From IMG/VR virus record IMGVR_UViG_3300025121_000011, positions 62,001 to 126,000 of that record: a stretch of 64,000 bases of DNA; one strand, given 5' to 3'. This document shows positions 20,181-51,959 of the stretch, one piece after another. The notes under the pieces are model-generated. The model was not told the DNA's origin. It worked only from the letters and a program-made list of their open reading frames with translations, and did no database searches. Position 1 is the stretch's first letter. Every line of letters begins with the position of its first letter. The translations under genes and the position numbers were made by a program.

Positions 20181-21618
20181 GATTCAAAAGAAGTATCCTG
20201 GGATTAAATTTGGCAGCCATGAGGATGCTAGAGATTTTGTGAATATTCATAATATCTTAGAAGCAGCCTTTGGTAGAGTAGATGCAGAAATTTTATCAGC
20301 TGCTTACTTAGAACGAAAAGAGCAAGACTTAAAAACTCCTAATGATTATTATTATTTAGTAACGAAAGCAATTTTAAAATTTAGTAACTTTAAAAAAGTA
20401 GCATATCCAATGGGAATGGGAACCTTATCTGAACCGTATTTAGTAAAATCTGATTTAGAGCAATGGGTCGGTTTAGTCCATAAGATATATCAAGCTGTTC
20501 AGTCAGGAAAGATGTCTTTTCATCAAGCACTAGATTATTATGCGAGTCTATTAGACAACAAAGATGATCAGCGCTTTAGATTCAAGAAATGGCTACTTTA
20601 CTATAAGAATGGAGAACATGAAAAGTATTCTGAGGAGGGAGCAGTAATTATGAAGAAACAATCTGATTTTCAATTTGGACTAAATTCTGTACCATATGAT
20701 AGATCTCCTGTTGTATTAGATGAGTCTGTTCAAAAGCAATTAAATGATTTAAAAGAATTTACTAAGAAAGAAGAAGATTTTGTCGCATGGAAGGCTCGGA
20801 TTAATGGAGCAATTAGACGCATAGACAAACTTCTTAGAGACGATCAGCATCTTAATCCCGAAGAACAGGCTGATTTAGCGGATATGCTGCATGCCTTTGA
20901 TCTTCAAATGCGTAGAGTGAGGCTGCAATCTATGGCTAGTGATATTGCATTTAGAACAGCAGGAAACTTTAAAAAGGTTGGATATTCCAAAGCATCAGAA
21001 ATTCTCACTGCTATCGCACAGGATCTTTCAGAACCCATTCCAGAGGCTCCGGTGGCGCCAGAATCCAGGCCCCCTGCGGCTATTCCTGGTGCTCCTGAAG
21101 GCGCTGGCCAGGGTGCAGAGTCTCCCGGAGCATCAGAGGCAATAGGGAGAGCCCTGGAGGCTGGCGAAGGTAATGAAAAAAGTCCGGGTATTTTGGTTGA
21201 GCCAAAAAAAACTCCCGGAATCAGAGGCGACTTAGCACAAGCTGCCACAAAATTAGAAGACGTGGCAGCGAGATTAGCAGATCGTAGAACGATTCGCCAA
21301 TTAGCAGAGTTTGATATAATATTAGATCAACTTGGATTGGCATCTTTATTCCCAGAGTTAATGGAAGCTCAAAGTAAGTTAATTGATGCATATTCTTATG
21401 CTATGGTTCGTGTCACAAAAATGTTGGGAATGTTATCTTCAGGTAGAAGCATGTCGGAAATTTCCGAAGCTAAGAAAACTGATATTTCTAATAAAGCAAT
21501 TAAAGAAGTAAATAAGACTATGTCTCAAGGTGAAGAACCTATTGATAACGGAAAAGGGCAGGGCGCCATTAATCAAGAGTTTTCTCAAGAAGTTACACCT
21601 CCTAAAAATATTGTATAA
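20152..21618 (+). CDS. putative internal head protein (carries the 20-aa tag; possible internal start at 20650)
   Basis: KKVA and KKQS sites; AFRTAGNFKKVGYSKASEIL motif; Pro/Ala/Gly linker. Confidence 0.55.
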   Translation: MKDLNKDIHRIQKKYPGIKFGSHEDARDFVNIHNILEAAFGRVDAEILSAAYLERKEQDLKTPNDYYYLVTKAILKFSNFKKVAYPMGMGTLSEPYLVKSDLEQWVGLVHKIYQAVQSGKMSFHQALDYYASLLDNKDDQRFRFKKWLLYYKNGEHEKYSEEGAVIMKKQSDFQFGLNSVPYDRSPVVLDESVQKQLNDLKEFTKKEEDFVAWKARINGAIRRIDKLLRDDQHLNPEEQADLADMLHAFDLQMRRVRLQSMASDIAFRTAGNFKKVGYSKASEILTAIAQDLSEPIPEAPVAPESRPPAAIPGAPEGAGQGAESPGASEAIGRALEAGEGNEKSPGILVEPKKTPGIRGDLAQAATKLEDVAARLADRRTIRQLAEFDIILDQLGLASLFPELMEAQSKLIDAYSYAMVRVTKMLGMLSSGRSMSEISEAKKTDISNKAIKEVNKTMSQGEEPIDNGKGQGAINQEFSQEVTPPKNIV

Positions 21619-21630
21619 GGAGTCTAAGTT

Positions 21631-22386
21631 ATGGATATTAATGAAGCATTAAAGCTTATTGCTAAAGTTGCCGAACATAATTTAATAGATAAGCCTTATA
21701 TAGTTGGTGGAGTACCTAGAGATGTTTATCTTAATGAAAAGGTTCAAACTACAGATATAGATTTAACAACTAATTCTCCGGATGTTTTACGACTCGGTAT
21801 ATTAATGGCTGATATTTTAAATGTTACATTTGAATTATCTGATGATGGACACGTTACCGTTTTTACAGAATCTTATGATATGGATTTCTCTAGTAATTTT
21901 GAATCTCTAAGAGTTATTGAACATTTGGATGTTGATAAAAAACATTTAGCAGAGGTATATAGTCGAGACTTTACAATTAATACTTTACATCAGGATTTGC
22001 TTACTAGAGAAATTATAGATCCAATTGGTACGGCTTTTGAAGATATTAAAAATAGAATAATTAAAACTCCAGTTCCCGCTGAAATCACGTTATCAGATGA
22101 TCCTCGTAGAATATATCGAGCTATTAATTTGGCAGTACGATATGATTTTGAAATCTCCAAAGATATAGAAGATTTTGTTTTAAAAAATGCACATTTATTT
22201 ACTTCGGAAAATATTAAAGATAAATATATTACAGTTAAACTAGCAAAAGCTTTAAAAATTAATCCAGATAAAACAATTAAACTTTTAAAGAAATTTAATT
22301 TATTTAAAAATGTACCATTAGTTGGTGAATTTAAAAATATTTTAATTCAAAATAAATTATTGGCGGAGTATTTGCAAGATGCCTGA
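21631..22386 (+). CDS. class II tRNA nucleotidyltransferase / poly(A) polymerase family protein
   Basis: YIVGGVPRD, DIDL, SRDFTIN, DDPRRIYRA. Confidence 0.88.
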   Translation: MDINEALKLIAKVAEHNLIDKPYIVGGVPRDVYLNEKVQTTDIDLTTNSPDVLRLGILMADILNVTFELSDDGHVTVFTESYDMDFSSNFESLRVIEHLDVDKKHLAEVYSRDFTINTLHQDLLTREIIDPIGTAFEDIKNRIIKTPVPAEITLSDDPRRIYRAINLAVRYDFEISKDIEDFVLKNAHLFTSENIKDKYITVKLAKALKINPDKTIKLLKKFNLFKNVPLVGEFKNILIQNKLLAEYLQDA

Positions 22387-23314
22387 TTCAGTTAAAAATC
22401 CATTTATAGCATATAGTTGGCCAGAGTATGAATCTCAAGGGCCTTCTTATAAAATTTTATCTGATTGGTGGAAGCAAAATGCAATTAATCTACCCGGAGA
22501 GTTTGATTCAAGTTATCAATCTTGGACTAAATGGTATCGAGAAAAATATAATACTTCTTGGGGTCATCAACATATGAACCCAGAAGACGTGCTAAAAATA
22601 TTAAAAGAATCAGTTCCAGAAGTTAATAATAGTATTATGAAAAATATTCAACATCGAACACAAAGATTGTTGAATATTAAAAAAGATGATGAAGCAAAAC
22701 CAGATTTATCAAATCCTATAAAATTTGGTCCAAGTAATTATAAGGGTCTTGTAGGAGTTAAACTTGGAGCAGATGTTGATGGAACATCAGAAGCTGTAAA
22801 ATCTTTTTTAGCCACTCTTGGTAAGTTAGCCAAAACAAAGGGTTATCAAAAACCATTTGTTACTAGCGGACATCGTTCTACTCGTGGACAAATTAGAGCT
22901 ATGGCTAATAATTGGAATAAGAATGGTGCAAATAAAGTTGTTACTGATGATGTCGCAAAACGATCGGCTAAAAATGAAAATACTATTAATAGAATTAGAA
23001 ATTTAACTCAAGCGCCAATTAATCTTGGACTTATATATCTTTTTGAATTATATCAAGATAAAGAAATGGTAATTCATATTAATGAAATTTTTGTGGAATT
23101 AGGTACAAATAGGCAAGGACTTAAAGCTGCATCAGAATATTGGGATGCAATGGGTAGACAGTCTAGTGCGCATCTTAGAACGCCAGCAGAAGCTGTAGAT
23201 TTAAGACAAACTGATGGAATTTTAGAACTTTTAAACTTAATCAAAGATAGTGGCAGATTTAATATGAAATTGATTTCAGAATCAGATCACTATCACGTTA
23301 GAATTTATAGCTAA
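22379..23314 (+). CDS. M15 (hedgehog/DD-peptidase fold) zinc peptidase, putative
   Basis: VTSGHRS..Q, SAH..AVDL, E.DHYHV. Confidence 0.6.
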   Translation: MPDSVKNPFIAYSWPEYESQGPSYKILSDWWKQNAINLPGEFDSSYQSWTKWYREKYNTSWGHQHMNPEDVLKILKESVPEVNNSIMKNIQHRTQRLLNIKKDDEAKPDLSNPIKFGPSNYKGLVGVKLGADVDGTSEAVKSFLATLGKLAKTKGYQKPFVTSGHRSTRGQIRAMANNWNKNGANKVVTDDVAKRSAKNENTINRIRNLTQAPINLGLIYLFELYQDKEMVIHINEIFVELGTNRQGLKAASEYWDAMGRQSSAHLRTPAEAVDLRQTDGILELLNLIKDSGRFNMKLISESDHYHVRIYS

Positions 23315-23337
23315 TTGCTAATATTTATTATTAAAGC

Positions 23338-35134: not shown

Positions 35135-38100
35135 ATGTCTACTTCAGGATTTATTAAAATTGGTTATTCTAGCGGTAATGTGGTTAAAGAAGTTTCTTCT
35201 GATATTGTTGCTGCCTCTCCACATATTTTGGCTAGACTAGAAAAACTCGCTAATACCTCTAAAGTATTGGCTCCTAAATCAGATGATTTTTTATATTTTA
35301 CAATTATATTTTTAAAAGCAGCGGAATCCGCTCTTGTTGATGATGATGGAAATTTAAAAAAAGTCGGTCACGAGCGTGCTTGGGGATATTTTGATGATAA
35401 ATATCATTGGCATGGAAATGTTCCAGCGCACAAAAATAATAATGGTGATATATTTCCTGAATCTGAATTAAAGAAGGCAGCTAGAGATTGGATTGGAACA
35501 CCATTATGTGTAGACCACAAATCAGAATCTGTTGATGGTATTCGTGGAATTATTTTAGATACTTATTATGATGAAAAGCACAAACAGGTTGTTGGTCTTT
35601 GTGCTTTGGATAAAGTGAATTATCCAAATTTAGCTCGAAAAGTTCAAACGGGTGTAGTGCGGTATGGCTCCATGGGAACTGCTGTAACTACTTCTATTTG
35701 CAGCGATTGTGGGAATAGAGCTACCACTCCTAAAGAGTATTGTGTCTGTGTTACAGCACGTTCAGCATATGGAGAAGTTAATATTGGTCTAAAGCCAATG
35801 GAATATAGTTTAGTAGTTCAGCCTGCCGAACCGGGTGCGCGATTGCTTCGATGTATTGCTTCTATAGGAGAACATAAGGCTGAATTAAGTAATTATGGAG
35901 TTTCTGATTTTGAAAAGTTTAGTGCTCAATTATCCTTGGGACAAGCAGAAGAATTAGACCAAATTTTAAAAGTTGCTTGTGGTCCACGTGGTTGTTCAGT
36001 AACTCAGCGCCAATCTATAGTAAATAATTATTTGCATAAGTATAATCTTGTTAAAACAGCAGAAGAAGGCGGATTAAGGTGGAGTGAAAATAGAGAGGTG
36101 CAGTTTGCTAAAGCGTTATCTCAATTGAGAGATGCAGGGGCTTCTGATTCTGATATTTCAGATTTATATGAAAGTTTTGGCAAATCCTATGATGATTCTC
36201 TTGAGAATAATATGTCTGTTGGTCAAGGAGAAACCTTTAGTAGCGGACAAGATGCTTCTGGAAGGGCAGCTATAGAAACTGTTGATAATGAAGGGGTTAG
36301 AGGAACTGGTGGAGAGTCTACCGGATTAGTTGCTAGTGATAATGGTGAGAATATTGATACATTTCAAACGGGAGGCGTAGGTCCTGAAACTTATGCTTTT
36401 TCTAGTTTAGATAAAAATAAAACGCATAAAAACATTATGGAGGAAATAATGAATGATTCTAAGTTAAACAAACGAGCGGAATTACGTCGTCGGATTGCAT
36501 ATTACTATGGTGGAGCCGCAGGAGATGGTAAGGCTGAACCTGTAGAGCCAAGTACTTTTACTTCAGAAGATTACAAGAAATATTGGATGGACGACAAACA
36601 CATGCATCAAGATAAGGCAATGGGCGGTCAAGATGGTATGTTTCCTGGTGACGAACAAGTTAAGGAACAACAGAAGCGCGCTCAGTTGGCCCAACGTCGA
36701 TTGGAGAGAAAAGCTTACTTTTATGGTGGAGCCGCAGGAGATGGTAAGGCTGAACCCGTAGAGCCAAGCACTTTTACTTCAGAAGATTACAAGAAATATT
36801 GGATGGATGATAAGCATATGCACCAGGATAAAGCTATGGGTGGACAAGATGGTATGTTTCCTGGTGACGAACAAGTTAAGGAACAACAGAAGCGCGCTAG
36901 ATTAAGTACAAAATTTAAGCAAGTTCGAGCACTAAATGGTGCGATCAACAAACAGGCTTCATGTTTTGAAGTTTATGCTGATGATAAATTAATTTTAGCA
37001 ACAACTGCTAAAGATATTTATGGTCCAAAACTAGAAGAGAATTGGAAGTTTTTAACCAGCAAAGAGTATGGCAAGGCTGTTGTTGCAGCTATTCGTACTG
37101 ATGGTTTACGTTCTGTGGCTGGAAAGCTTACTAGATTAGGTCAAGCAGATCCGATGGCTGGATTAGGTGCTCCTCCTGCTGCTCCCGGTGCTTTGGATGC
37201 TCCAATGCCGGAAGAGGCTCCCCTACCAGAAGAATCTATAATGCCAGAAGAAGATCCAGAAGCTGGTGCTGAGGATATTGACGAAGAAGATCCTCAAGCT
37301 AAAGCATCAGATGCTTTAGTGGTAGTAGAGGAAGCTTTTGCTGATCTAAAAGAAGCAATTGAAGACTTGGGCAGTGGAAAAGGTGGAGTAGAAGTAAATA
37401 TTGATACAGATGCCGACAAACCAGTAGATGAAATTACCAATCTATCTCGTAACCTTTTAAAAGATATGAAGATTGTTTTGGCAGAATCTAGTGAATCAGC
37501 TGACGAATTAGCTTTAATTATTGAAGCTTATGATCACAAAAATAGGATTTCTCCTAAAAAGTACTCAGAGCTTAAATCACTAACTGCTAGTGCATTGGAA
37601 GATTCAGCACAATTAACCAGCGAAGCACGTACCCTGCTAAAGATGGCAAAGATTGTTTCTTCGGCTATGGTAAAAACTTCTGAATATGTAGAAGAAGCAG
37701 AAGATAGTGCAAAAGAACGAGAGGAAGTAGCTACTAAAGAGCCCTCAGGAAAAGATACTTCAAAGGCAGCCTCAAAGGCAGAGTCTGAGTTGTTTGCTCA
37801 GGCGCTTAATTTACGTAAACAACGTAGATTAGCTTTGTTAGAATCTGCTCGTAAAAAAATTGCTATGGAAGCTTTAGATTCAGACGAAGTAGAAAATGAA
37901 TCTCCAGATTTAAATGAAGCAGATGATGGTGCTGGTCATGCGCAACGCGTAGCAGAATCAACTCCAAAAGGTGATTCTGATAAAGCAGGTGCTCCGGCCG
38001 TTCCAGTAGGTACCCCTCAAGAGGTGGCTAATAAAGCTCCAACAGGTAATCTGGCTGATGACGGAAAATTCAACTTAGCTGACGATAAAGAAAATGAAAT

Positions 38101-38590
38101 GGAAGATATTGCAGAAGAAGAAGCTGAAGAAGAAGTTGAAGAGCACGAAGAAGATATGCATGGTGGGAAAGATGAAAATGATGCAAATGACGTAGTCCCA
38201 AATGATGGCGTTCAGGGTGCGTCTTTTGTAGTTGAAAAACTTCCATCACCACGCGCTGCAATAGCTAAAAAGTTGATTGAAAGAAAAGCGGCAGAAGAGA
38301 AGGAGGCCGTTAAACTTCGGATGAGAAGAGCTTATGACTTAGCAATGGATATGCAACGCAAGGGTTTGATTGCTCCAACTAGAGCATCATTAGATAGCCA
38401 AGTAGATTTGGTTTTAGAATTTGATGACAAAGCCTTTGAAGCATTTAAACGATCTATAGCTAATGCGAGAATGCCTGAGACTATTAAGGTTGCTAGTGAT
38501 CTTGGCGGATTAAACATAGGTTATGAAACACCTGAGGATGCACCACAAAGATCAATGGTAGAAAATCTTTCTGCATTATTCAACAAATAA
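35135..38590 (+). CDS. prohead protease/scaffold polyprotein
   Basis: N-terminal NNNGDIF..G.PLCVDH..RGIILD..SMG..CSDCG..EYSLV..PA; acidic coiled-coil C-terminus; lies between portal and capsid genes. Confidence 0.75.
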   Translation: MSTSGFIKIGYSSGNVVKEVSSDIVAASPHILARLEKLANTSKVLAPKSDDFLYFTIIFLKAAESALVDDDGNLKKVGHERAWGYFDDKYHWHGNVPAHKNNNGDIFPESELKKAARDWIGTPLCVDHKSESVDGIRGIILDTYYDEKHKQVVGLCALDKVNYPNLARKVQTGVVRYGSMGTAVTTSICSDCGNRATTPKEYCVCVTARSAYGEVNIGLKPMEYSLVVQPAEPGARLLRCIASIGEHKAELSNYGVSDFEKFSAQLSLGQAEELDQILKVACGPRGCSVTQRQSIVNNYLHKYNLVKTAEEGGLRWSENREVQFAKALSQLRDAGASDSDISDLYESFGKSYDDSLENNMSVGQGETFSSGQDASGRAAIETVDNEGVRGTGGESTGLVASDNGENIDTFQTGGVGPETYAFSSLDKNKTHKNIMEEIMNDSKLNKRAELRRRIAYYYGGAAGDGKAEPVEPSTFTSEDYKKYWMDDKHMHQDKAMGGQDGMFPGDEQVKEQQKRAQLAQRRLERKAYFYGGAAGDGKAEPVEPSTFTSEDYKKYWMDDKHMHQDKAMGGQDGMFPGDEQVKEQQKRARLSTKFKQVRALNGAINKQASCFEVYADDKLILATTAKDIYGPKLEENWKFLTSKEYGKAVVAAIRTDGLRSVAGKLTRLGQADPMAGLGAPPAAPGALDAPMPEEAPLPEESIMPEEDPEAGAEDIDEEDPQAKASDALVVVEEAFADLKEAIEDLGSGKGGVEVNIDTDADKPVDEITNLSRNLLKDMKIVLAESSESADELALIIEAYDHKNRISPKKYSELKSLTASALEDSAQLTSEARTLLKMAKIVSSAMVKTSEYVEEAEDSAKEREEVATKEPSGKDTSKAASKAESELFAQALNLRKQRRLALLESARKKIAMEALDSDEVENESPDLNEADDGAGHAQRVAESTPKGDSDKAGAPAVPVGTPQEVANKAPTGNLADDGKFNLADDKENEMEDIAEEEAEEEVEEHEEDMHGGKDENDANDVVPNDGVQGASFVVEKLPSPRAAIAKKLIERKAAEEKEAVKLRMRRAYDLAMDMQRKGLIAPTRASLDSQVDLVLEFDDKAFEAFKRSIANARMPETIKVASDLGGLNIGYETPEDAPQRSMVENLSALFNK
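36500..36898 (+). repeat. two direct repeats (period 216 nt) encoding near-identical 61-aa peptides
   Basis: Y(Y/F)YGGAAGDGKAEPVEP...GMFPGDEQVKEQQKRA at 36500-36682 and 36716-36898. Confidence 0.97.
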
Positions 38591-38605: not shown

Positions 38606-39205
38606 ATGATTGGAAATAGATTTAATGGCGATAATATCGCCGCAGAGTTTCAGAGGATTCTTCAGAAACATAATCTGGAAAAAAAGGCTCAAGCTCTTTT
38701 TGATTCTTCTGCCGAAGATGATCCTATAGAGAATATATTGAATTCAGGAGAGGATGAAGAGTTTGATGATTCCTTATCTGATCCAGAGTCTTTTTTGATG
38801 GCTGATGAATTACATGCAGATAATATTAGTGGGGCTCTAGATGGAAACATCAAAGCATTAGATGGTATATCTGAATCTTGCCCTATTTGTGGTAAAAGAG
38901 TATGTAATTGTTCAGATAATAAAGCTGTTTCTGCAAATGAATATTTTGATACCACAGCTAATCATATTTTGACTGGACTTGGAAAGATTGCTGGAAGCTT
39001 AAAGTTAAAAGGTCATAACTTTGCTGCGGATATTGTGGAGGCTACCGCCATGGGTATAAAAGATGATTTTATAAAAGAAGCATCTGCAAAAATGGCTGTC
39101 GCCGTAGAACTTAAAAAAATGGCTAAAGATTTATCTAAATCAGGAAATCAAATGGCTGCTGATATGGTTCTTGCTACAATTGATAATATCAAGAAAACCT
39201 CTTAA
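38606..39205 (+). CDS. putative head protein with two copies of the 20-aa tag
   Basis: LGKIAGSLKLKGHNFAADIV and LKKMAKDLSKSGNQMAADMV; LEKKA site; CPICG..CNC. Confidence 0.6.
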   Translation: MIGNRFNGDNIAAEFQRILQKHNLEKKAQALFDSSAEDDPIENILNSGEDEEFDDSLSDPESFLMADELHADNISGALDGNIKALDGISESCPICGKRVCNCSDNKAVSANEYFDTTANHILTGLGKIAGSLKLKGHNFAADIVEATAMGIKDDFIKEASAKMAVAVELKKMAKDLSKSGNQMAADMVLATIDNIKKTS

Positions 39206-39313: not shown

Positions 39314-40009
39314 ATGCTAAGAGTTATACATACCGGCACATCATTACCTGCAAGTTATCCTTTGGATCCTACGGCCGAATTTGAGCCAGGTATGATTGCA
39401 CAGCTTAAAATTTTAGGAAATGATATCGTTGTGGGAGTTAGTGATGGAACGGCGCCATTAGGAATAATAGATGATGCCAGGACAAATGCATTTAGTAAAG
39501 CTCAAATTGATGAAATTATAGTAATTGAAGTAGCCTCCTCTAATATAGTAGAGGTTAATGGAGTAAAAACTAATATTGCAGAAGTAATGGCTCCATTAGA
39601 ATTTCCAAATGTAAATCGAAATAGTTTCACATCTACCATTACAGTATCTTTAAATGATGTAAATGGGTTGGTAATTGTACCTGCTGGTACTGTATTGAAT
39701 TATGATTCAGATGAAGATGGAAATAATGATGCTTTTAAAATAATAACTAGTTATGTATATAGAATAGCAACGAAACCTGGAGATGATTCTACAGTTGGAT
39801 CGGGTCGGGTAACGGTACATTATCATCGGGGAATATATGCTACAGACCAGTTTGATACCACTCAAATTTATCCATTAAATGCAAATTTATATGTAGGATT
39901 AGACGGAAAATTAACTACCGCCCAACCTACAGAGGGCCATCCCGCAGTAGCATATGTGACTGGTCCGCCATCATCATTGATGGGAACTTTGGAATTTCTT
40001 TTCGTCTAA
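39314..40009 (+). CDS. capsid decoration/cement-like protein
   Basis: PLGIIDD..STVGSGRVT..G.Y.TD..LY..DGKLTT; paralogous to 43320. Confidence 0.55.
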   Translation: MLRVIHTGTSLPASYPLDPTAEFEPGMIAQLKILGNDIVVGVSDGTAPLGIIDDARTNAFSKAQIDEIIVIEVASSNIVEVNGVKTNIAEVMAPLEFPNVNRNSFTSTITVSLNDVNGLVIVPAGTVLNYDSDEDGNNDAFKIITSYVYRIATKPGDDSTVGSGRVTVHYHRGIYATDQFDTTQIYPLNANLYVGLDGKLTTAQPTEGHPAVAYVTGPPSSLMGTLEFLFV

Positions 40010-40026: not shown

Positions 40027-40110
40027 ATGAATAAGTTGGGTCTAAAATTAAAAGAATTATTGCAATTCTTAATATCCATGAATCTGAATAATTTTGCATA
40101 TGCTATTTAA
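40027..40110 (+). CDS. 27-aa mini-ORF consisting essentially of the 20-aa tag (or a gene remnant)
   Basis: AGAGGA upstream; MNKLGLKLKELLQFLISMNLNNFAYAI*; not in the ORF track. Confidence 0.4.
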   Translation: MNKLGLKLKELLQFLISMNLNNFAYAI

Positions 40111-40250: not shown

Positions 40251-40637
40251 ATGCCAAAATGGGATCATATAACTAAACAGGCTTGGGAACAGAGCGAAAC
40301 GGCTATGGAATTTGAAAAATATATTCTTTCTTTAGCCGAAAGATTAGATTTGATGGCTCAAGCTTCTACGTTAGATACAGTCAATCAGAAGGCTACTGAA
40401 GTTAAAAATACTATGGGTGATGCAAAGAAAAGTTTAGATGCATTTGTTGATTCTGCCTTAGCAGATGACGCAGAAACAAATCCTGAGTTAGAAGAGATAA
40501 GCGAAGAAGAGCAAAAAGAAGCAAAAGCAAAGTTGTTATTAGAACTTAAACTTGCTGCTGAAGCTGCCGCAGATCTAGGTAATATTAAACTGGCCTACCG
40601 GATTGAGAGAACAATATCTGAAATTTCCGGAGAATAA
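40251..40637 (+). CDS. putative head protein with C-terminal tag
   Basis: TACTAATT at 40212; AGGAG SD; LKLAAEAAADLGNIKLAYRI. Confidence 0.6.
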   Translation: MPKWDHITKQAWEQSETAMEFEKYILSLAERLDLMAQASTLDTVNQKATEVKNTMGDAKKSLDAFVDSALADDAETNPELEEISEEEQKEAKAKLLLELKLAAEAAADLGNIKLAYRIERTISEISGE

Positions 40638-40640
40638 ATT

Positions 40641-43298
40641 ATGAAAATAAATCGCGCAGGTTCCTCAGAAATATTTGATATTTATTCTGATATAATGCAA
40701 AAATATTTGACCAAAAAAGCTGGTAAAGCAACGGAAGTTGGTGAAGCTTTATTTAAAGAATTATTTCCATCTGCTACTAAAATATCTTTTGATTCTTCCC
40801 AACAACTTTTAGAAGTTTTTACGAAAGTCACCGAAGGGAAATCTTTACCTGCTATCGGTAGAAAACTTAGATTTATTGGGGAACAGCTTTCTAATAATGG
40901 ACCTAAGTTGACAGATCCAAACTGGATAGATACTTCGGAAGATTTTATACAAGAAGCAGTAATGAATTGCGAAGATGTATTAGATGCTATTAAAGGGATT
41001 TCTATAAATGATACAGAGTCTGCTAAATTAGTTGCATATATGCAGCGAGTCGTCTCAAAAGAAGGCCCAGATCAAGTTGCGCTTTTAGAAGTAGCCTCAA
41101 GACGTTTAAAGACCATAGGTCCTCCAAAAGTAGAACCTTCAGTTACTCCAAAAGTAGAACCTTCAGTTACTCCAAAAGTAGAACCTCCAGTTGCTCCAAA
41201 AGCAGAACTTCCAATTGCTCCAAAAGCAGAACCTCCAATTGCTCCAAAAGTGCAGTCTCCCGCTCAACCAGCGGCTGGTATAAGAGGTCGAGGCGTCCCG
41301 GTGGCTCCAAAACCAAAGCCACTTCAAGAAGGCGAGTTGGGCGCAAGAATTCGACAAAATTCTGCTCCAAAAGTAGCAGTTACAAAAGCTAAGGTTGAGC
41401 AAGCTACTGGTGTAGCTATGCCAGCTAAAGCTGTAGAGTCATTAGATAATAGCGTTGAAATTGCTGCCAGACTTGGTGCGATGGAAGCTTCTATTGCAGA
41501 ATTATCTACTGCCGCCGCACGTTCTGGAGAAGAAACTAAACGAGCAATTCAGCCAGTTATAGAGTCATTAAAACAAGAATCTGCTGAATCTGCTCAAAAA
41601 TTGCAAAGTATTGCAGATGAAGTCGCTCAAATACACACAGATAAAGCAAAAATAGCAAAGGGCTTATCTGACGAACAAGCAAAAGCTGTCAAAAAGATGG
41701 TGGAAAAAGAGACTAAAAGTTTGGCCACAGCTTCCAAGAAGGCTGGTGCCGAAGAGTCAAGTAGACTTTTAAAAAATACAGAGATTGCTCAAAATTTTTC
41801 AGCCGCTGTTCAAAAGGGAGTGGTAGGAAAATTTTTACTCGGAGTTGCAGGACCACTAGCCCTTAAAGGGCTGGGTATAGCCGCAGTATTGGGTTTATTA
41901 GCTTGGGGTGGAATATCGTTGTGGGATTACTTATCTAATCCTGATAATAAAGATGACCTACAAACATATCAAACCAGCGTTTCAGATTTGGGAAAAGCAA
42001 TTGCTGCCGCTAGAGCTGCTCATGGAACGTTACGTTTTAATCAAAGAACTTATGGTAACGAACAGAATATAGATGTTTTGGATGAATTAAAAGATAATGA
42101 AGAGAGTGCTTCTATTTTAATGGAACCAAAAGATCCGGCCGCTATGATAATTGCCGCAAAACAAACGGAAGAATTAAAAGCTGAAATTACGGAATTTTTA
42201 ACAAATCAAGAAGCTCTTAGAGGTGACTTGGCTTCTCTAGATGGCTTCCAAGAGACTATTCAGGCGGATCAGCAACTGCTGAGTGCTTTAGAACATTGGA
42301 GACAGGTGGTAATCGACATTTACCCAGCCGCTGAATCTGCAATTAGTGCAGGAGCTGGAAGTGCTAATATTGGTGCAGCCACAGGACCTATTGCAGAAAG
42401 TAGACCCGGAGCCTCAACTGGAGCCTCAACAGATCTTGGTTCTGGATCTGATAATCCTATTATTTTAGATGTTTATGGAGAAAAAATAGATATCTCAAAT
42501 AAACCACCAGGATTTAGAAGTGCGGCTTTTAGAATTGCAAGTGATTTATTACAAACTCCATTAGGTATGGCCTTTATGGATCCGGATAATAGATGGGGAG
42601 GTTTTATCAGGAAAACTGGTAATCCACAAATTGATTATTTAAATTCTTTAGGTTATCTTTATAAAGAGGGCGTATTTAATCGTTCTCAATTAAGAAAGTT
42701 TATTCGACATTCATTACCCAAACAAGGACGCCGCAGACATAGTGGATGGAAAAATGCTATAAATTATTATCGTAATAATCCAGTTTCACAAAAAGTGGCT
42801 GAAAATCTATTACTTTCACAGAGTTTTATTAAAGAATCTACTAATAGATTAAACATTGGTATGAGGAAAATGGCAGATCAATATCCAAATAAGTATATAA
42901 GTGATGCTATTTCTGGTCTTTCAGATCAATATTCTAAGTTATATTATGCAGGGCTTAAAAGCATGTATAATCAGAAGAGGGAGAATGTAAAGGCTGATTA
43001 TTCTGATCTTTATGATGTTCATAAAGAGAAGGGTGCAGACTTAATTCACGAAGCACATCCAAATGCTATTGTTGTTTCTGATGCAATGGGAAATGGGGGC
43101 TTAGTGGAAAATTTGCTAGAGCAAAAATCACATTCTGAAGGTGTGGCTAAGAGCGCTCCTACAGGAAACTTTCGAGGAAAACACGCTGATCTCGCAGTGA
43201 TTGACGCTTTGATTAAAATTGCAAATCAAGCTGATAATGACGGACTTTTTGAAGTTTCTAAAATGATAGATTCAACGATTGAATCTATTCTAAATTAA
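40641..43298 (+). CDS. large putative internal virion protein (Pro repeats, coiled coil, hydrophobic segment, C-terminal tag)
   Basis: PKVEP repeats; LLGVAGPLALKGLGIAAVLGLLAWGG; LIKIANQADNDGLFEVSKMI. Confidence 0.6.
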   Translation: MKINRAGSSEIFDIYSDIMQKYLTKKAGKATEVGEALFKELFPSATKISFDSSQQLLEVFTKVTEGKSLPAIGRKLRFIGEQLSNNGPKLTDPNWIDTSEDFIQEAVMNCEDVLDAIKGISINDTESAKLVAYMQRVVSKEGPDQVALLEVASRRLKTIGPPKVEPSVTPKVEPSVTPKVEPPVAPKAELPIAPKAEPPIAPKVQSPAQPAAGIRGRGVPVAPKPKPLQEGELGARIRQNSAPKVAVTKAKVEQATGVAMPAKAVESLDNSVEIAARLGAMEASIAELSTAAARSGEETKRAIQPVIESLKQESAESAQKLQSIADEVAQIHTDKAKIAKGLSDEQAKAVKKMVEKETKSLATASKKAGAEESSRLLKNTEIAQNFSAAVQKGVVGKFLLGVAGPLALKGLGIAAVLGLLAWGGISLWDYLSNPDNKDDLQTYQTSVSDLGKAIAAARAAHGTLRFNQRTYGNEQNIDVLDELKDNEESASILMEPKDPAAMIIAAKQTEELKAEITEFLTNQEALRGDLASLDGFQETIQADQQLLSALEHWRQVVIDIYPAAESAISAGAGSANIGAATGPIAESRPGASTGASTDLGSGSDNPIILDVYGEKIDISNKPPGFRSAAFRIASDLLQTPLGMAFMDPDNRWGGFIRKTGNPQIDYLNSLGYLYKEGVFNRSQLRKFIRHSLPKQGRRRHSGWKNAINYYRNNPVSQKVAENLLLSQSFIKESTNRLNIGMRKMADQYPNKYISDAISGLSDQYSKLYYAGLKSMYNQKRENVKADYSDLYDVHKEKGADLIHEAHPNAIVVSDAMGNGGLVENLLEQKSHSEGVAKSAPTGNFRGKHADLAVIDALIKIANQADNDGLFEVSKMIDSTIESILN
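41122..41252 (+). repeat. 24-nt tandem repeat (about 5.5 units; PKVEPSVT/PKAEPPIA)
   Basis: ctccaaaagtagaaccttcagtta units that diverge along the array. Confidence 0.9.
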
Positions 43299-43996: not shown

Positions 43997-45010
43997 ATGT
44001 TTAATACACAAGGCGAATTAAGCGCAAAAAACGTAAAAGATGCTTTGGCCCAGATCGTAAGGTATGCGTCAATTATTGAAGAGTTAGCACCTTCTAGTTC
44101 AGCTCTATCTCAAGGTTCCTCACTAAATGAAGAGCAGAGAGATGAGATGATCAAGCAAGCTCTAATGACTCAAGAAGGCAAAATTGCTTTAGGTCAGGCT
44201 ATGGCCAACCCAATCCGAAGAAACCTTGACTATCAGGGTGTAGGACGAAAGGCTCTCGTAGTCGATCCCCTCCCACAAGGTGCTTTGCCAATATATGACC
44301 GCGATATTGATGTTGGTGCAGTTGTTATTTCTAGTAACGGTACCGCTCCAGAATCACGCGTTTTTGGTGACAGAGTAACTATTCCTGAGTTTGAAGTGGT
44401 TTCTAACCCAACTGTCCGTATTGCTGAAGTCAAGCGTCGGAGATTTAATGTTATCGATCGTGCCCAGCAAAAGGCTCGTCAGGAAATTCAAGCCCAGGAA
44501 GACAAGAACGTATTTGCTGCTCTTGATTTCGCAACTGATAGTGCTAAAGGTGGAGAGAATGCCTACCAGCGTTTAGATAATACTACAACTGCTGATGAAC
44601 TTTCAAAGCAGGGCCTTTTGGCTCTAAAGCGTCAAGTTGATCGGTGGGACCTGGTAACTTCTAAATATTTTATGCATATCAACGAATTTACCGATATGCT
44701 CAATTGGGAATCTGCTGGTGCTGCTGGTGCTTCACAGGTAGATCCTGTTACTCAGCGTGAATTGCTACAAACTGGCCTTTATGGCTCAATCTTCGGTGCC
44801 GACATCATCGTCTCTAAGGTTGTTGAGAACCGTCAGGTTTTCGCAGTTGCAGATCCTGAGTTCGTAGGTGTTATGCCTATTCGCCAGGACATAGAAGTAT
44901 TACCCGCTGACGAACCTAAACAATTGAAGTTAGGCTGGGTGGTGAGTGAAATAATAGGTATAGGTATCGTCAATCCTCGTGGCGCTGCAAGTGGTTATGT
45001 GACTGATTAA
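43997..45010 (+). CDS. major capsid protein (HK97 fold)
   Basis: ALGQAMANPIR, P.FEV.SNP.V, IQAQED, G.IFGADI..S; strong SD, optimised codons, strong downstream terminator. Confidence 0.85.
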   Translation: MFNTQGELSAKNVKDALAQIVRYASIIEELAPSSSALSQGSSLNEEQRDEMIKQALMTQEGKIALGQAMANPIRRNLDYQGVGRKALVVDPLPQGALPIYDRDIDVGAVVISSNGTAPESRVFGDRVTIPEFEVVSNPTVRIAEVKRRRFNVIDRAQQKARQEIQAQEDKNVFAALDFATDSAKGGENAYQRLDNTTTADELSKQGLLALKRQVDRWDLVTSKYFMHINEFTDMLNWESAGAAGASQVDPVTQRELLQTGLYGSIFGADIIVSKVVENRQVFAVADPEFVGVMPIRQDIEVLPADEPKQLKLGWVVSEIIGIGIVNPRGAASGYVTD

Positions 45011-46788: not shown

Positions 46789-46896
46789 ATGGATTTAGAT
46801 TCAGATATTCAAAACTTTATTAGTGACTTTTATAAAGATGCGTGGAGAATTATTATTAGACCTTGGAAAGATTATATATTTCAAGAAGATTTATAA
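46789..46896 (+). CDS. 35-aa hypothetical ORF
   Basis: MDLDSDIQNFISDFYKDAWRIIIRPWKDYIFQEDL; read manually. Confidence 0.3.
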   Translation: MDLDSDIQNFISDFYKDAWRIIIRPWKDYIFQEDL

Positions 46897-46905
46897 GGAT
46901 TATAA

Positions 46906-47157
46906 ATGAATTTTTGGTTTTCTGAATATAAACAATTGTGTGATGATTTTGAGGCAATTGGTTATGATATTGGAAAATATCGCCTTCTCGACCAAAGCGA
47001 ATGTGTAAAATTTTGTATTGTAAATAGCAAAGTTACATTATGGATTTGGTCTGATGAGATGCACGAATATGAACCATATCAAATATCTGAAGTATTTGAT
47101 GTATTATCAAAAAAAGTACAAGAAATAATTATTCATAATATGGATCTATTTGTATAA
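46906..47157 (+). CDS. small hypothetical protein
   Basis: AAGGA SD; ends VQEIIIHNMDLFV. Confidence 0.55.
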   Translation: MNFWFSEYKQLCDDFEAIGYDIGKYRLLDQSECVKFCIVNSKVTLWIWSDEMHEYEPYQISEVFDVLSKKVQEIIIHNMDLFV

Positions 47158-47166
47158 AGGAGCATT

Positions 47167-48480: not shown

Positions 48481-48541
48481 TGTGGATTTATAGAAGCAAA
48501 CATATTAATATTTAGCGCTCCCATTAGATGGGAGAAATTTG

Positions 48542-49471: not shown

Positions 49472-49476
49472 TTATA

Positions 49477-50274
49477 TTAAAGCATTTGGCTTACGGATGC
49501 ATCTATTATTCTAAATTCTCCTGTGACTTTCGATGTGCCTACATTTCCTTTTCTAATTTCACTTAAAGTCATACCTATTTTTTCTCTCAAATCTAATAAT
49601 CTAGAAAATAGTGGATCCATTCTTAAAATATTTATGACATCATCTTTTTCGCATCGTAGTAATTGTGCTGTATATATAGAATTATAACTATATGCAAGTA
49701 TATTTGCTATTAATGGTTTTTTTTCAATATAAAGCGCTTGTTGTTCCAAGGGATATTTCTCGTCTAAATAAGAAGTTAATATAGGAAAGAATCGGTCTAT
49801 ATCTTCATCGTTAGTTATAACATTTACTGCTTCAACCATAATCCAAAAGAAATCCTTAGAATGAGCGTAAACCTTTGGAAATAGACCGCTAAATTCTTGC
49901 TGTAGTTTAAACTCATTTTCATTCATATCATAATAAAGGGAGCTTTTGGAAACTTTTAATACAAAAGCATCATTATTTGGTAAACTATAAACAGCTCTAA
50001 ACGCACCTTCACTAATATATTTAAATCCAAGAGACTTTAGATAATCATTTACGGCTCTTAGAGTAGATTTATTTTGTAATTCATTATTTAATTTATCTAA
50101 TAACCCAGAGGTAAGTCCCAGAAATTCTTCTTCTTCTTGTGTATCTGAAAGCGGTTTCTGTCCTAATTCTTTTTCCCAATCAATAATAGATAAATCATCT
50201 ACTTCTTTTGCTTCATCATTTAATTCTTGAGCACGTAGAAGATTAGATAATATTTTAAGCTTTGAAGTAAACAT
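49477..50274 (-). CDS. protein kinase-like enzyme with N-terminal tag
   Basis: SEGAFRAVY, VLKVS, NENEF, EIRKGNVG, IIDAS. Confidence 0.7.
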   Translation of the reverse strand: MFTSKLKILSNLLRAQELNDEAKEVDDLSIIDWEKELGQKPLSDTQEEEEFLGLTSGLLDKLNNELQNKSTLRAVNDYLKSLGFKYISEGAFRAVYSLPNNDAFVLKVSKSSLYYDMNENEFKLQQEFSGLFPKVYAHSKDFFWIMVEAVNVITNDEDIDRFFPILTSYLDEKYPLEQQALYIEKKPLIANILAYSYNSIYTAQLLRCEKDDVINILRMDPLFSRLLDLREKIGMTLSEIRKGNVGTSKVTGEFRIIDASVSQML

Positions 50275-50296
50275 ACGGTCCTCTTAATAAAAAGAT

Positions 50297-51145
50297 TTAA
50301 AATAATCCTTTATGTGGTTCATCGAAGATAGAAGCATCTAATATCATAAATTCGCCAGTTATTTTAGAAGTTCCAACGTTATCCTGGCGAATCTCATCTA
50401 TGCTTAGCCCTGTTTTATTTGAAACTTTTAATAATCTTAAAAATAAAGGATCGCTCTTAAGAACCGCTTTAACTTCTGTTTCAGTGCAGTGTAATAAGTT
50501 TGCTATAGGTAGCAGATCATATCTATTAAATATACTAAATATATCCGTAACAAGTGGTGAATCATCAGAGTTTTGTTGATCTATAAACGCAGCTATTTTT
50601 GGAAAAAATTTATTTATTTCAGAATTAAATTTTATAACATTTGCTGATTCTATAATAATCCATGAAAAGGAATCTGAATGAGCATAAACTTTTGGAAATA
50701 AACCGCTAAATTCTTGCTGAAGGTAGAACTCATCTTTATTCATTTTAATGCCAGATTCGCCACTTTTTGATATTTTTAAAACAAAATCTTCACTACTTGG
50801 TAAAGAATATACTATTCGAAAGTAGCCACTTCCACTCTCTTTTAATCCTAAATCTATCAAGGACTTTTTGATGTTTTTAATATCATATGTATTTGTATCT
50901 GTAAATGGCTTTTTATTTAGTTCATACAATAGAGAGTTAGATAATCCAAAAAAACTTGCCTCTTCTGGATCAATATCTCCGGCAAATGGTTTTTGATTTA
51001 ACTCTTGTTCCCAATTTATAGCAGAAAGGGTTTCGTCAGTTTCTTCGCCAAAATTATTAAAAAGATTATCTATTGCCTTTGCTTCATCATTTAATTCTTG
51101 AGCCCGTAAAATTTTGGATAACGTATTTAGTTTTGAATGAATCAT
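50297..51145 (-). CDS. protein kinase-like enzyme (paralog) with N-terminal tag
   Basis: GSGYFRIVY, VLKIS, NKDEF, EIRQDNVG, ILDAS; start MIHSKL at 51145 chosen by alignment with the paralog. Confidence 0.7.
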   Translation of the reverse strand: MIHSKLNTLSKILRAQELNDEAKAIDNLFNNFGEETDETLSAINWEQELNQKPFAGDIDPEEASFFGLSNSLLYELNKKPFTDTNTYDIKNIKKSLIDLGLKESGSGYFRIVYSLPSSEDFVLKISKSGESGIKMNKDEFYLQQEFSGLFPKVYAHSDSFSWIIIESANVIKFNSEINKFFPKIAAFIDQQNSDDSPLVTDIFSIFNRYDLLPIANLLHCTETEVKAVLKSDPLFLRLLKVSNKTGLSIDEIRQDNVGTSKITGEFMILDASIFDEPHKGLF

Positions 51146-51193
51146 GCGCTTTCCCATTAATATGTTGGATAATACTCTCATCATATTTCATAA

Positions 51194-51207
51194 TATTAAT
51201 ATTAATA
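51194..51207. promoter_or_regulatory. overlapping palindromic TATTAATA pair, putative bidirectional late promoter
   Basis: TATTAATATTAATA between the divergent kinase and peptidase genes. Confidence 0.45.
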
Positions 51208-51230
51208 GTCATATTGTATAGGAGTAATTA

Positions 51231-51959
51231 ATGCCTTTCAATGTTAAAAGTCCGCCTAATGATTTGAAGAGACTAAGGCTAATTGCATTGGCTTCAATTT
51301 TATCAAAACAAGGATTATATCAAGAAAGTTTAGATGTTTTAGATCTAATGTTTAGCGATTCCGATGAAGACCCTTTTCTTGTTGATGTTTCAGAACATGG
51401 ATTTAAAATAGATGCCAGATGGTTAGTGGATGGTAAAAATATAAAATTGGCTACAGATGTATTAGAATCTTTAAGAAAAGCCGAAGATACTCTTCCTGAT
51501 GGTTATAATTTTTTAATTTTATATGGATACAGAACTCTTGATGAACAGAAGAAAATAGTTAAAACACAAGAGAGGGAATTGAAAGATACTAATCCAGATG
51601 ATTGGCGTGAAAAATTAAAAACTTATACAGGAGGGTATGAAGAACTTAAATTAGATTCAGATAATATTTCATACTTAAATCATAGAAGTGGCCGATCGGT
51701 AGACTTAACTCTTTTATATAAAGATAAAGAAGTAGAGATGGGTTTTGATAAAAATGGAAATGCTAATATGGATCAAAGTGATAGATTAGATTCTGATGAT
51801 ATTGATTTAGATATCAAACAGAATAGAAAAATTCTTGCAGATGCTTTATCTTCTGAAGGTTTTGAGAATTACAAAGAAGAATGGTGGCATTGGGGTTTAA
51901 AAATGAAGGAGGGTGGAGATGAGAAAGAATCTTCTAATTCAGCGGACGTTTTTAATTGA
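51231..51959 (+). CDS. VanX-like D-Ala-D-Ala dipeptidase (M15D) with N-terminal tag
   Basis: YGYRT..EQ, NHRSGRSVDLTL, EMG, NR.IL...GF.NY.EEWWHW. Confidence 0.85.
   Translation: MPFNVKSPPNDLKRLRLIALASILSKQGLYQESLDVLDLMFSDSDEDPFLVDVSEHGFKIDARWLVDGKNIKLATDVLESLRKAEDTLPDGYNFLILYGYRTLDEQKKIVKTQERELKDTNPDDWREKLKTYTGGYEELKLDSDNISYLNHRSGRSVDLTLLYKDKEVEMGFDKNGNANMDQSDRLDSDDIDLDIKQNRKILADALSSEGFENYKEEWWHWGLKMKEGGDEKESSNSADVFN

What the first reader, a model, noticed from the sequence alone, without database searches (positions are those of the whole stretch)
20941..51347. Shared 20-residue tag on head proteins and unrelated enzymes: candidate capsid-cargo addressing system
Seen: an ungapped motif L-x2-h-[AS]-x2-[LA]-x3-[GDNE]-x4-[AS]-x2-[IV] recurs in otherwise unrelated ORFs. 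Copies: LGKIAGSLKLKGHNFAADIV and LKKMAKDLSKSGNQMAADMV (ORF 38606), LKLAAEAAADLGNIKLAYRI (40251), LIKIANQADNDGLFEVSKMI (40641 C-terminus), LVELGDLADEQDEYAFADFA (32380), AFRTAGNFKKVGYSKASEIL (20152), LKILSNLLRAQELNDEAKEV and LNTLSKILRAQELNDEAKAI (both kinases), LIALASILSKQGLYQESLDV (VanX peptidase), LKELLQFLISMNLNNFAYAI (mini-ORF 40027), and a weaker VISLYDSLKKYNLNGYKDVL (48542). It lies at termini or domain boundaries. I did not see it in the replication genes or purB. Known: T4 internal proteins use a short capsid-targeting sequence. Inference: this helical hairpin docks on the scaffold, core or inner capsid surface and lets the phage recruit arbitrary enzymes for packaging and injection.
Basis: partly seen in the sequence, partly recalled or inferred. 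Interest (0 to 1): 0.9.

Follow-up and report, generated by a model that had tools for sequence, protein, structure and literature searches.

The report
Shared helix-turn-helix module in head proteins
Three neighbouring head-assembly genes of an uncultured 335-kb aquatic phage share a conserved 34-residue helix-turn-helix, probably a procapsid docking element like the end of known scaffolding proteins, but the claimed copies on enzymes are no better than chance.

Summary
All 11 quoted peptides exist, but only four are related. They are two tandem copies in g38606 (38966-39073, 39098-39202), the C-terminus of g40251 (40533-40634) and the C-terminus of g40641 (43197-43295). These form one 34-residue helix-turn-helix module. 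It is the conserved island of three fast-evolving genes lying between the prohead protease and the major capsid gene of a phage G-like jumbo phage. Orthologue profiles match each other full-length (hhalign E 2e-15 to 2e-7; controls score 7-15 against 29-59). A module profile finds only these four sites in the window, only these three gene families in about 80 related phages, and 270 protein clusters among 1.84 billion; all 150 listed are small scaffold-like proteins. The two "kinase" N-termini, the VanX-type peptidase N-terminus, 32380, 20152, 48539 and the mini-ORF fail every independent test. The enzymes lie in a variable island absent from relatives. The best reading is a scaffolding-type docking module, reused on a large membrane-segment protein that may be an ejection protein. 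That function is inferred, not shown. The enzyme-cargo addressing idea is not supported.

The parts
38606..39205 (+). g38606, a 199-aa acidic scaffold-like protein. It has an N-terminal helix, a disordered acidic linker with a small Cys cluster, and a C-terminal domain made of two tandem modules.
   Evidence: pI 4.7. AlphaFold gives pLDDT 91-96 for residues 121-190, with helices at 116-134, 138-179 and 182-197, and the N-terminal two-thirds disordered. All 37 orthologues found have two module copies. No Pfam, PHROG, NCBIfam or PDB match.
38966..39073 (+). Module copy R1 (g38606 residues 121-156)
   Evidence: 39.5 bits against the module HMM. Pairwise identity among orthologues is 0.61, against 0.16 in the linker. 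hhalign R1-R2: 98.5% probability, E 2e-15.
39098..39202 (+). Module copy R2 (g38606 residues 165-199)
   Evidence: 47.2 bits. hhalign against C641 gives 97%, E 2e-11, and against C251 gives 93%, E 3e-7. Controls score 7-15.
40251..40637 (+). g40251, a 128-aa acidic protein with a conserved N-terminal helix, a variable acidic middle and a C-terminal module
   Evidence: 30 orthologues aligned. Family median pI 4.55. Identity is 0.55 in the module and 0.19 in the middle.
40533..40634 (+). Module copy C251 (g40251 residues 95-128)
   Evidence: 37.4 bits. hhalign against C641 gives 94%, E 2e-7.
40641..43298 (+). g40641, an 885-aa protein. It has Pro-rich PKVEP-type repeats (about residues 172-205), a central hydrophobic segment of transmembrane length (about 399-430), a conserved block with GGLVEN (819-824) and PTGNFR, and a C-terminal module. 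It is a candidate internal or ejection protein.
   Evidence: Every full-length orthologue has a hydrophobic segment at a similar relative position. The 33 related clusters have no Pfam domain. Identity is 0.09-0.21 in the body, 0.54 at 761-852 and 0.40 in the module. About half of the orthologues end after helix 1.
43197..43295 (+). Module copy C641 (g40641 residues 853-885)
   Evidence: 36.7 bits. 22 distinct orthologous copies.
35135..38590 (+). g35135, 1151 aa, with a head maturation protease domain at residues 97-208. It marks the upstream boundary of the module-bearing cluster.
   Evidence: phrog_18299, E 5e-13. Related to phage G gp19 and gp21. It carries no module.
43997..45010 (+). Major capsid protein with a conserved 43-residue N-terminal extension. 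It is one candidate docking partner, but this was not shown.
   Evidence: 50.5% identical to phage G gp27 over residues 44-326. The extension is conserved in all relatives. It is not strictly linked to the module, because Rctr197k has the motif without any module.
39314..40009 (+). g39314, a highly conserved beta-rich head-module protein of unknown role, interleaved with the carriers and carrying no module
   Evidence: 78% mean column identity. Weak paralogy to g43320. The AlphaFold model is poor and the fold search was empty.
51279..51338 (+). Not shown to be a member.
   Evidence: -0.2 bits against the module HMM. Best hhalign score is 16.5 against C641, over helix 1 only. The Peptidase_M15 match itself is real, at 41.6 bits against a cutoff of 27.
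50200..50259 (-). Not a member.
   Evidence: No HMM hit. hhalign scores 13.6 or less against every head module. It is homologous to the copy in 50297-51184 through whole-gene paralogy.
51071..51130 (-). Not a member.
   Evidence: The only relative among 5.8 billion proteins is its paralogue.
20947..21006 (+). Not shown to be a member.
Evidence: It was not hit by the HMM.
40048..40107 (+). A chance match in a lineage-specific spacer.
   Evidence: No tblastn or blastn conservation in relatives. The spacer is 16-69 bp in most relatives.

Best explanation
The real feature is a 34-residue helix-turn-helix module with consensus hhxxLxKhAxxhxxxG[DN]xxhAxxhhxxTIxxI. It occurs four times in three adjacent genes between the prohead protease and the major capsid gene of a phage G-like jumbo phage: twice in tandem at the C-terminus of the small acidic protein g38606, once at the C-terminus of the small acidic protein g40251, and once at the C-terminus of the 885-residue protein g40641. 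The most likely function is a procapsid docking element of the scaffolding-protein type. The hairpin would bind either the inner face of the capsid protein shell or the scaffold core, so that g38606 and g40251 act as scaffold or core proteins, and g40641, which has a conserved membrane-length hydrophobic segment, is co-assembled into the head by the same contact. SHOWN: the four copies are homologous; they are the conserved islands of otherwise fast-evolving proteins; they are restricted to these three families; they are predicted helix-turn-helix; the carriers are acidic and sit in the head-assembly cluster. INFERRED: what the module binds, that the carriers enter proheads, and that g40641 is an ejection protein. 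The seven other listed copies, including those on the enzymes, are generic helix-Gly-helix look-alikes and are not part of this system.
For: Relatedness: orthologue profiles align full-length and in register, R1-R2 at E 2e-15, R2-C641 at 2e-11, R2-C251 at 3e-7 and C251-C641 at 2e-7. Reversed or column-shuffled controls score 7-15 against 29-59. Specificity: the module HMM scores 37-47 bits at the four sites, the next best in six frames is 3.2, and the decoy maximum is 5.4. In about 80 related loci it hits only the three orthologue families, with two copies in 37 of 37 g38606 orthologues. Constraint: identity is 0.41-0.61 in modules against 0.09-0.19 in linkers. Global distribution: 270 clusters among 1.84 billion proteins; the 150 listed are 81-385 aa, 139 of them have two copies, and 122 end within 10 residues of the last module. 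Structure: AlphaFold gives pLDDT 91-96 for a helix-turn-long helix-turn-helix domain after a disordered N-terminal region. Context: portal, protease and capsid genes flank the cluster and gene order is conserved. The carriers have pI about 4.5, which argues against DNA binding. Precedent: the P22 scaffolding protein binds coat protein through a C-terminal helix-turn-helix (abstracts listed). The 80alpha scaffolding protein and SaPI1 CpmB share a homologous C-terminal capsid-binding motif (PMC5644958).
Against: No binding partner was identified. There is no sequence or fold match to any solved scaffolding protein. About half of the g40641 orthologues lack helix 2, so a complete module is dispensable for that protein in some lineages. 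The conserved positions are mostly the hydrophobic stripes that hold the hairpin together, so conservation may reflect folding as much as a binding surface. Some g38606 orthologues carry peptidoglycan-binding domains, which is odd for a scaffold that leaves before DNA packaging. Phage G, the nearest cultured relative, has no detectable module. No cultured member exists, so there is no virion or prohead proteome.
Confidence: 0.6

Rival explanations
1. One tag, in both head-module and enzyme versions, addresses arbitrary cargo (two kinase-like proteins, a VanX-type peptidase and others) to the capsid interior for packaging and injection.
For: The enzymes share a layout of an N-terminal helix-Gly-helix, an acidic linker and then a globular domain. 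The helix is the best-conserved segment between the two kinase paralogues. An unrelated ParB-like protein in related phage L066 has a similar N-terminal element and layout. There are weak in-register profile scores: peptidase vs L056 repeats 19.8, peptidase vs g48539 segment 19.4, kinase vs peptidase 15.8, and L066 vs the others 15-16. In phage G a muramidase encoded in the head module is found in the virion (PMC12484599).
Against: The module HMM gives -0.2 bits for the peptidase and nothing for the kinases. Leave-one-group-out profiles recover no other group above decoys. Against 609 real N-termini the candidates fall in the top 1-2% but unrelated N-termini score higher, at 17.3 and 22.2. The enzymes are absent from all relatives and sit in a low-GC variable island with a homing-endonuclease-like gene, and the kinases are on the opposite strand. 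No enzyme appears among the 150 listed carriers.
Confidence: 0.06
2. The module is a scaffold-core self-association element. The hairpins of g38606, g40251 and g40641 bundle with each other to build a multi-protein core, rather than contacting the capsid protein.
For: There are four related hairpins on three co-encoded proteins, with a tandem pair joined by one long helix in g38606. Some relatives have three or four copies. The capsid N-terminal extension is not strictly linked to the module. The T4 scaffolding core is likewise built from several proteins (PMC3012670).
Against: Nothing computed here distinguishes this from coat binding. Known C-terminal helix-turn-helix or helix-and-hook elements of scaffolds contact the capsid protein.
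Confidence: 0.25
3. The whole pattern, including the four head copies, is a chance or compositional resemblance between amphipathic helices.
For: Single-sequence alignments of the copies are indistinguishable from alignments to unrelated proteome segments: R2-C251 scores 31, while unrelated segments reach 36-40.
Against: Profile-profile scores of 29-59 compare with 7-15 for reversed and column-shuffled controls. The HMM separation is 37-47 bits against a decoy maximum of 5.4. A profile built only from the window's four copies finds 47 orthologous copies in independent phages and nothing else.
Confidence: 0.03

Closest known systems
C-terminal helix-turn-helix coat-binding domain of phage scaffolding proteins (P22 gp8 type)
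   Same: A small, acidic, largely unstructured or helical protein encoded next to the capsid gene. It has a C-terminal helix-turn-helix that is its best-conserved and functionally critical part. The proposed role in procapsid assembly is the same.
   Different: No detectable sequence or fold similarity. Here the hairpin is duplicated in tandem and also occurs on two further proteins. Binding to coat protein has not been shown.
Shared C-terminal capsid-binding motif of the 80alpha scaffolding protein and SaPI1 CpmB (PMC5644958)
   Same: Different proteins carry a homologous C-terminal element that contacts the same site on the capsid protein. This is the principle proposed here for g38606, g40251 and g40641.
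   Different: That motif is a 16-21-residue helix-and-hook with a conserved RIIK sequence, found on a helper phage and its satellite. Here it is a 34-residue hairpin without RIIK, on three proteins of a single phage.
T4 capsid targeting sequence of internal proteins (PMC3012670)
   Same: A short conserved element on otherwise diverse proteins that directs them into the prohead core.
   Different: The T4 element is short, N-terminal, carried by a diverse set of defence-related cargo, and removed at maturation (the last point is my own knowledge). Here the module is C-terminal, 34 residues long and folded. It was found on no enzyme or diverse cargo, and its removal was not tested.
Encapsulin cargo-loading peptides
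   Same: A C-terminal address on proteins that are loaded into an HK97-fold shell.
   Different: Those are short, unstructured peptides on enzymes (my own knowledge). No enzyme carries the module here.

Membership tests
Scaffolding-protein C-terminal helix-turn-helix (P22 gp8 type) | Small protein encoded between the portal/protease genes and the capsid gene, largely disordered or helical | tested here: met
   Gene order is portal 28249, protease domain in 35135, then g38606, g40251 and g40641, then capsid 43997. AlphaFold shows a disordered N-terminal two-thirds. pI 4.7.
Scaffolding-protein C-terminal helix-turn-helix (P22 gp8 type) | C-terminal helix-turn-helix that is the conserved part of the protein | tested here: met
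   Helices at 116-134, 138-179 and 182-197 with pLDDT 91-96. Identity is 0.41-0.61 in the modules against 0.16 in the linker.
Scaffolding-protein C-terminal helix-turn-helix (P22 gp8 type) | Sequence or structural homology to a solved scaffolding protein | tested here: not met
   Profile search of PDB sequences: best E 0.25, to unrelated proteins. Foldseek against PDB: best E 2.2, to generic helical proteins. No Pfam, PHROG or NCBIfam family.
Scaffolding-protein C-terminal helix-turn-helix (P22 gp8 type) | Direct binding of the hairpin to the capsid protein, and a requirement for it in procapsid assembly | not testable with these tools
   This needs co-expression, pull-down or cryo-EM work. 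Only single-chain structure prediction was available.
T4-type capsid targeting sequence | Short N-terminal peptide | tested here: not met
   The four true copies are C-terminal, 34-residue folded hairpins.
T4-type capsid targeting sequence | Carried by diverse, unrelated cargo proteins | tested here: not met
   Only three gene families carry it in about 80 phages. The 150 listed carriers among 1.84 billion proteins are scaffold-like. Their extras are acidic tails, a small beta unit or PG-binding repeats, with no enzymes.
T4-type capsid targeting sequence | Removed by the prohead protease at maturation | not tested
   Conserved h-x-E motifs lie next to modules (KEA after R1, GGLVEN before C641), but the protease specificity is unknown and there are no proteomic data.
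80alpha SP / CpmB helix-and-hook | Conserved RIIK hook at the extreme C-terminus | tested here: not met
   The module consensus ends in TIxxI and has no RIIK.
Peptidase M15 / VanX (ORF 51231-51959) | Match to the family profile above the curated threshold | tested here: met
   PF01427 at 41.6 bits against a cutoff of 27. NCBIfam VanX scores 45 bits, far below its equivalog cutoff of 320, so this is a distant relative and not VanX itself.
Protein kinase-like fold (ORFs 49477-50274 and 50297-51184) | Match to any kinase family profile or solved kinase | tested here: not met
   No hit in Pfam, NCBIfam or PDB sequences. The only hit is a PHROG of unknown function. The label rests on motif resemblance read by eye (GxGxFRxVY...VLK, DNVG, ILDAS).

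The most novel reading that the evidence does not exclude
The module is a portable procapsid address. In this phage family the same hairpin that builds the scaffold also loads a membrane-inserting ejection protein and, in some members, peptidoglycan-binding domains. Degenerate N-terminal versions of it would then direct accessory enzymes of the variable island into the head for injection: a VanX-type peptidase and two kinase-like proteins here, and a ParB-like protein in L066. The weak in-register similarities (scores of 15-20) and the shared tag-linker-enzyme layout do not exclude this.
Probability: 0.06. Interest if true: 0.8.

Novelty: new variant of a known kind. Interest (0 to 1): 0.35.

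Why it matters
The assembly of very large capsids is poorly understood, and almost all members of this abundant aquatic jumbo-phage family are uncultured and unannotated. (Phage G's capsid is T=52, from my own knowledge.) This work gives names and a testable role to three "hypothetical" head genes and defines a sequence family of at least 270 protein clusters that no library describes. It also suggests that one docking hairpin is reused to bring several different proteins into the prohead. If binding is confirmed, the module would be a natural handle for loading proteins into large phage capsids. Equally useful, it shows that the more striking claim of enzyme cargo rests on a generic helix-Gly-helix pattern.

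Tried and rejected
1. The strict pattern against residue shuffles gives 7 hits against 0.08 expected. I rejected this as evidence because the pattern was fitted to the same copies.
2. Single-sequence Smith-Waterman alignment with shuffles gave attractive z-scores: peptidase vs L056 repeats 6-7, and g20152 vs R1 5.7. Against real proteome segments the same scores are ordinary; g20152 ties with an unrelated beta-rich protein at 40.
3. I tested a separate "form B" N-terminal module covering the kinases, the peptidase, the L056 repeats, the g48539 mid-segment and L066_10287. Seed HMMs, leave-one-out profiles, hhalign and a null set of 609 N-termini gave nothing above background. The L056 repeats are more simply extra, diverged copies of the head module, because R2 variants grade into them.
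4. Homologue searches for the enzymes found almost nothing. The kinase finds only its paralogue and the peptidase has one relative at 82% identity, so conservation of their tags cannot be judged.
5. g32380 has no diverged relatives.
6. I tested whether the capsid N-terminal extension co-occurs with the module, as a clue to the docking partner. Phage G and LR745208 lack both, but Rctr197k has the extension motif without the module. This is uninformative.
7. PDB sequence and fold searches for g38606, the protease domain and the kinase-like protein returned nothing.
8. g39314 could not be identified. The model has pLDDT 51 and the fold search was empty. It shows only weak paralogy to g43320 and no similarity to phage G gp26.
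9. The approximately 120 module-bearing clusters with E between 1e-9 and 1e-3 in the large search were not listed by the tool. Single-copy carriers outside the three families therefore cannot be ruled out at that scale.

Full report
WHAT THE WINDOW IS. The 64-kb window has 33% GC and nearly all its genes on one strand. It belongs to a very large phage. It encodes a DnaE-type polymerase with an intein, a chaperonin, RecA, a gpA-type large terminase with a LAGLIDADG intein, a portal that also carries an intein-type insertion, purB, and a VanX/M15-type peptidase. ORF 43997-45010 is the major capsid protein, 50.5% identical to gp27 of Bacillus phage G. The same phage is on a 335-kb IMG/VR contig. 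More than 300 metagenomic contigs encode capsid proteins 76-92% identical, so this is a large uncultured aquatic family.

CHECKING THE OBSERVATION. Seven fit the stated pattern. The excess over shuffles (7 against 0.08) is circular, because the pattern was derived from those same copies.

In 38606 (two copies), 40251 and 40641 the similarity continues for about 14 more residues, to a TIxxI motif. All four copies lie in C-terminal regions of three neighbouring genes.

THE FOUR HEAD-MODULE COPIES ARE REAL. Gene order around the capsid gene is conserved in relatives: DUF192 protein, protease-containing g35135, g38606, g39314, g40251, g40641, g43320, capsid. Alignments of 26 g38606, 30 g40251 and 48 g40641 orthologues show the motif regions as conserved islands in otherwise very variable, acidic proteins. 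Pairwise identity is 0.41-0.61 in the modules and 0.09-0.19 in the linkers.

Profiles of the four orthologous sets align with each other full-length and in register:
- R1-R2: E 2e-15
- R2-C641: E 2e-11
- R2-C251: E 3e-7
- C251-C641: E 2e-7
Reversed or column-shuffled templates score 7-15, against 29-59 for the real pairs.

A combined HMM scores 37-47 bits at the four sites. The next best hit in all six frames of the window is 3.2 bits, and decoys reach 5.4. Across about 80 related loci it hits only orthologues of these three genes, always twice in g38606 orthologues.

Against 1.84 billion representative proteins the module profile finds 270 clusters at E<=1e-3. All 150 listed are 81-385 aa; 139 have two copies and a few have three or four; 122 end within ten residues of the last module. 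No Pfam, PHROG, NCBIfam or PDB entry matches these proteins.

THE OTHER SEVEN COPIES ARE NOT SUPPORTED. The module HMM gives -0.2 bits for the peptidase N-terminus and nothing for the kinase-like proteins, 32380, 20152, 48539 or the mini-ORF.

- An HMM of all 11 copies finds 47 sites above the decoy maximum in independent relatives. All are in the three head families and none is elsewhere.
- An HMM of the four head copies finds none of the other seven (next best 4.1 bits, decoy maximum 11.0).
- An HMM of the seven finds none of the four, and only one site in relatives.

The individual copies fare as follows:
- The two kinase-like genes are paralogues over their full length, so their two copies count as one event. 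Their only relative among 5.8 billion proteins is each other.
- The peptidase has a single relative, at 82% identity.
- The kinase-like genes, the peptidase and purB are absent from relatives. They occupy a low-GC variable island between the capsid gene and conserved downstream genes, next to an endonuclease VII/HNH-like gene, and the kinase-like genes are on the opposite strand.
- The mini-ORF lies in a spacer that most relatives lack.

A SECOND, N-TERMINAL FORM? The peptidase and kinase N-termini, two extra repeats in the L056 orthologue of g38606, a segment of g48539 orthologues, and the N-terminus of a ParB-like protein in L066 all fit LxxxG(L)xxEAxxh. I tested this as a separate module.
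- Leave-one-group-out profiles recover nothing above decoys.
- hhalign scores among them are 15-20.
- Against the N-termini of 609 real proteins these values are in the top 1-2%, but unrelated sequences exceed them, at 17.3 and 22.2.
- The strict pattern occurs 3 times in 200,623 residues of real non-carrier proteins.
So this form is neither established nor excluded. The L056 repeats are most simply extra, diverged copies of the head module.

WHAT THE MODULE PROBABLY DOES. AlphaFold predicts g38606 as a disordered N-terminal two-thirds followed by a confident C-terminal domain (pLDDT 91-96). That domain is a helix, a turn at KGH, one long helix joining the two modules, a turn at SGN, and a final helix. 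Each module is therefore a helix-turn-helix.

g38606 and g40251 are strongly acidic (pI about 4.5), which argues against DNA binding. Their position between the protease and capsid genes, small size, disorder, rapid divergence and conserved C-terminal hairpin are the hallmarks of scaffolding proteins. The P22 scaffolding protein binds coat protein through a C-terminal helix-turn-helix (papers listed).

Several proteins sharing one capsid-binding C-terminal element also has a precedent, in the 80alpha scaffolding protein and SaPI1 CpmB (PMC5644958).

g40641 is different in kind. It is 885 residues long, with proline-rich repeats and a central hydrophobic segment of membrane length. That segment is conserved in position in every full-length orthologue, and no relative has a recognisable domain. 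This is what one expects of a head-stored ejection protein.

My best explanation is that the hairpin is a procapsid docking element used by two scaffold or core proteins and reused to co-assemble g40641. The homology, restriction, conservation and fold are shown. The binding partner and the fate of the proteins are inferred.

I could not separate coat binding from core self-association. The capsid protein's conserved N-terminal extension is a candidate partner, but it is not strictly linked to the module.

Two observations do not fit a simple scaffold. About half of the g40641 orthologues lack helix 2. Some g38606 orthologues carry peptidoglycan-binding domains. The latter, together with the virion-associated muramidase encoded in phage G's head module (PMC12484599), hints that some of these proteins stay in the head and act at the cell wall.

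COMPARISON AND NOVELTY. Functionally this resembles the scaffolding-protein helix-turn-helix and the SP/CpmB shared motif. It is not a sequence or fold member of any described family. It differs from the T4 capsid targeting sequence (PMC3012670) in being C-terminal, folded, and not found on diverse cargo.

I rate it a new variant of a known kind. It is an undescribed module family, duplicated in tandem and shared by three head proteins in a widespread jumbo-phage lineage. Interest is moderate for the real feature and low for the enzyme-cargo claim as stated.

Noticed in passing
window 5116-9333, 25366-28239, 28249-32109: Three essential genes each carry an intein-type insertion. DnaE has Hint/intein domains at residues 396-516. 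The large terminase has an intein with a LAGLIDADG endonuclease at 204-530. The portal has a LAGLIDADG_3 domain at 556-621 and extra length.
   Followed up: no
window 45215-51959: A variable accessory island sits inside the structural region. It holds an endonuclease VII/HNH-like gene, purB, g48539, two kinase-like paralogues on the minus strand, and a VanX/M15 peptidase. It is absent from relatives, GC is about 30%, and it is flanked by the conserved capsid gene and g51913/g52649.
   Followed up: partly
L056:1268-2317 (g38606 orthologue) and P0089, P0017: Some scaffold-like module carriers contain peptidoglycan-binding repeats; PG_binding_1 matches P0089 at E 2e-13. L056 also has two extra diverged module-like repeats at residues 189-251. 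This is an unusual partner for a scaffold.
   Followed up: partly
window 43997-44125: The capsid protein has a conserved 43-residue N-terminal extension (FNTxGExxAxNVxxALxxIVKYAxxxEEL) followed by a variable Ser/Ala linker. Phage G gp27 lacks it. Rctr197k has the motif inside a long Q-rich extension.
   Followed up: partly
window 43095-43112; 39074-39097; 44070-44090: Conserved hydrophobic-x-Glu motifs lie beside the modules and in the capsid extension: GGLVEN before C641, D-h-h-KEA after R1, and IIEEL in the capsid N-terminus. These are possible prohead-protease sites. This is speculation only, because the protease specificity is unknown.
   Followed up: no
window 39243-39271: A strong terminator-like hairpin (13-bp stem followed by a T-run) sits immediately after g38606.
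   Followed up: no
L066:10287-11075: A 262-aa protein has an N-terminal LVALSGWLASSGLRKEARQV element, an acidic linker, and a domain with a ParB-type DGNHR motif. The layout matches the window's kinase-like proteins and peptidase, but the similarity is not significant.
   Followed up: yes
window 38885-38915 and orthologues: The disordered linker of g38606 holds a small Cys cluster (CPICGKRVCNC). Orthologues have different Cys-rich inserts or none, so this looks like a variable zinc-ribbon-like element.
   Followed up: no
L065:5287-6308; L027 and L028, about 950 bp: Three relatives have an insertion of about 1 kb between the g39314 and g40251 orthologues, where most have 16-69 bp. The content was not examined, but it has no module hit.
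   Followed up: no
window 39314-40009 and 43320-43982: g39314 and g43320 are very well conserved beta-rich head-module proteins that look like distant paralogues (hhalign 71%, E 4e-5). Neither resembles phage G decoration protein gp26 by sequence, and their role is unknown.
   Followed up: partly
window 20152-21618: g20152 has a conserved helix-Gly-helix, then a variable Pro/Ala/Glu-rich linker, then a strongly conserved C-terminal domain (KLExxAARLxDRRxIRxLAEFDI...). Its low-complexity linker resembles that of g40641. Function is unknown.
   Followed up: partly
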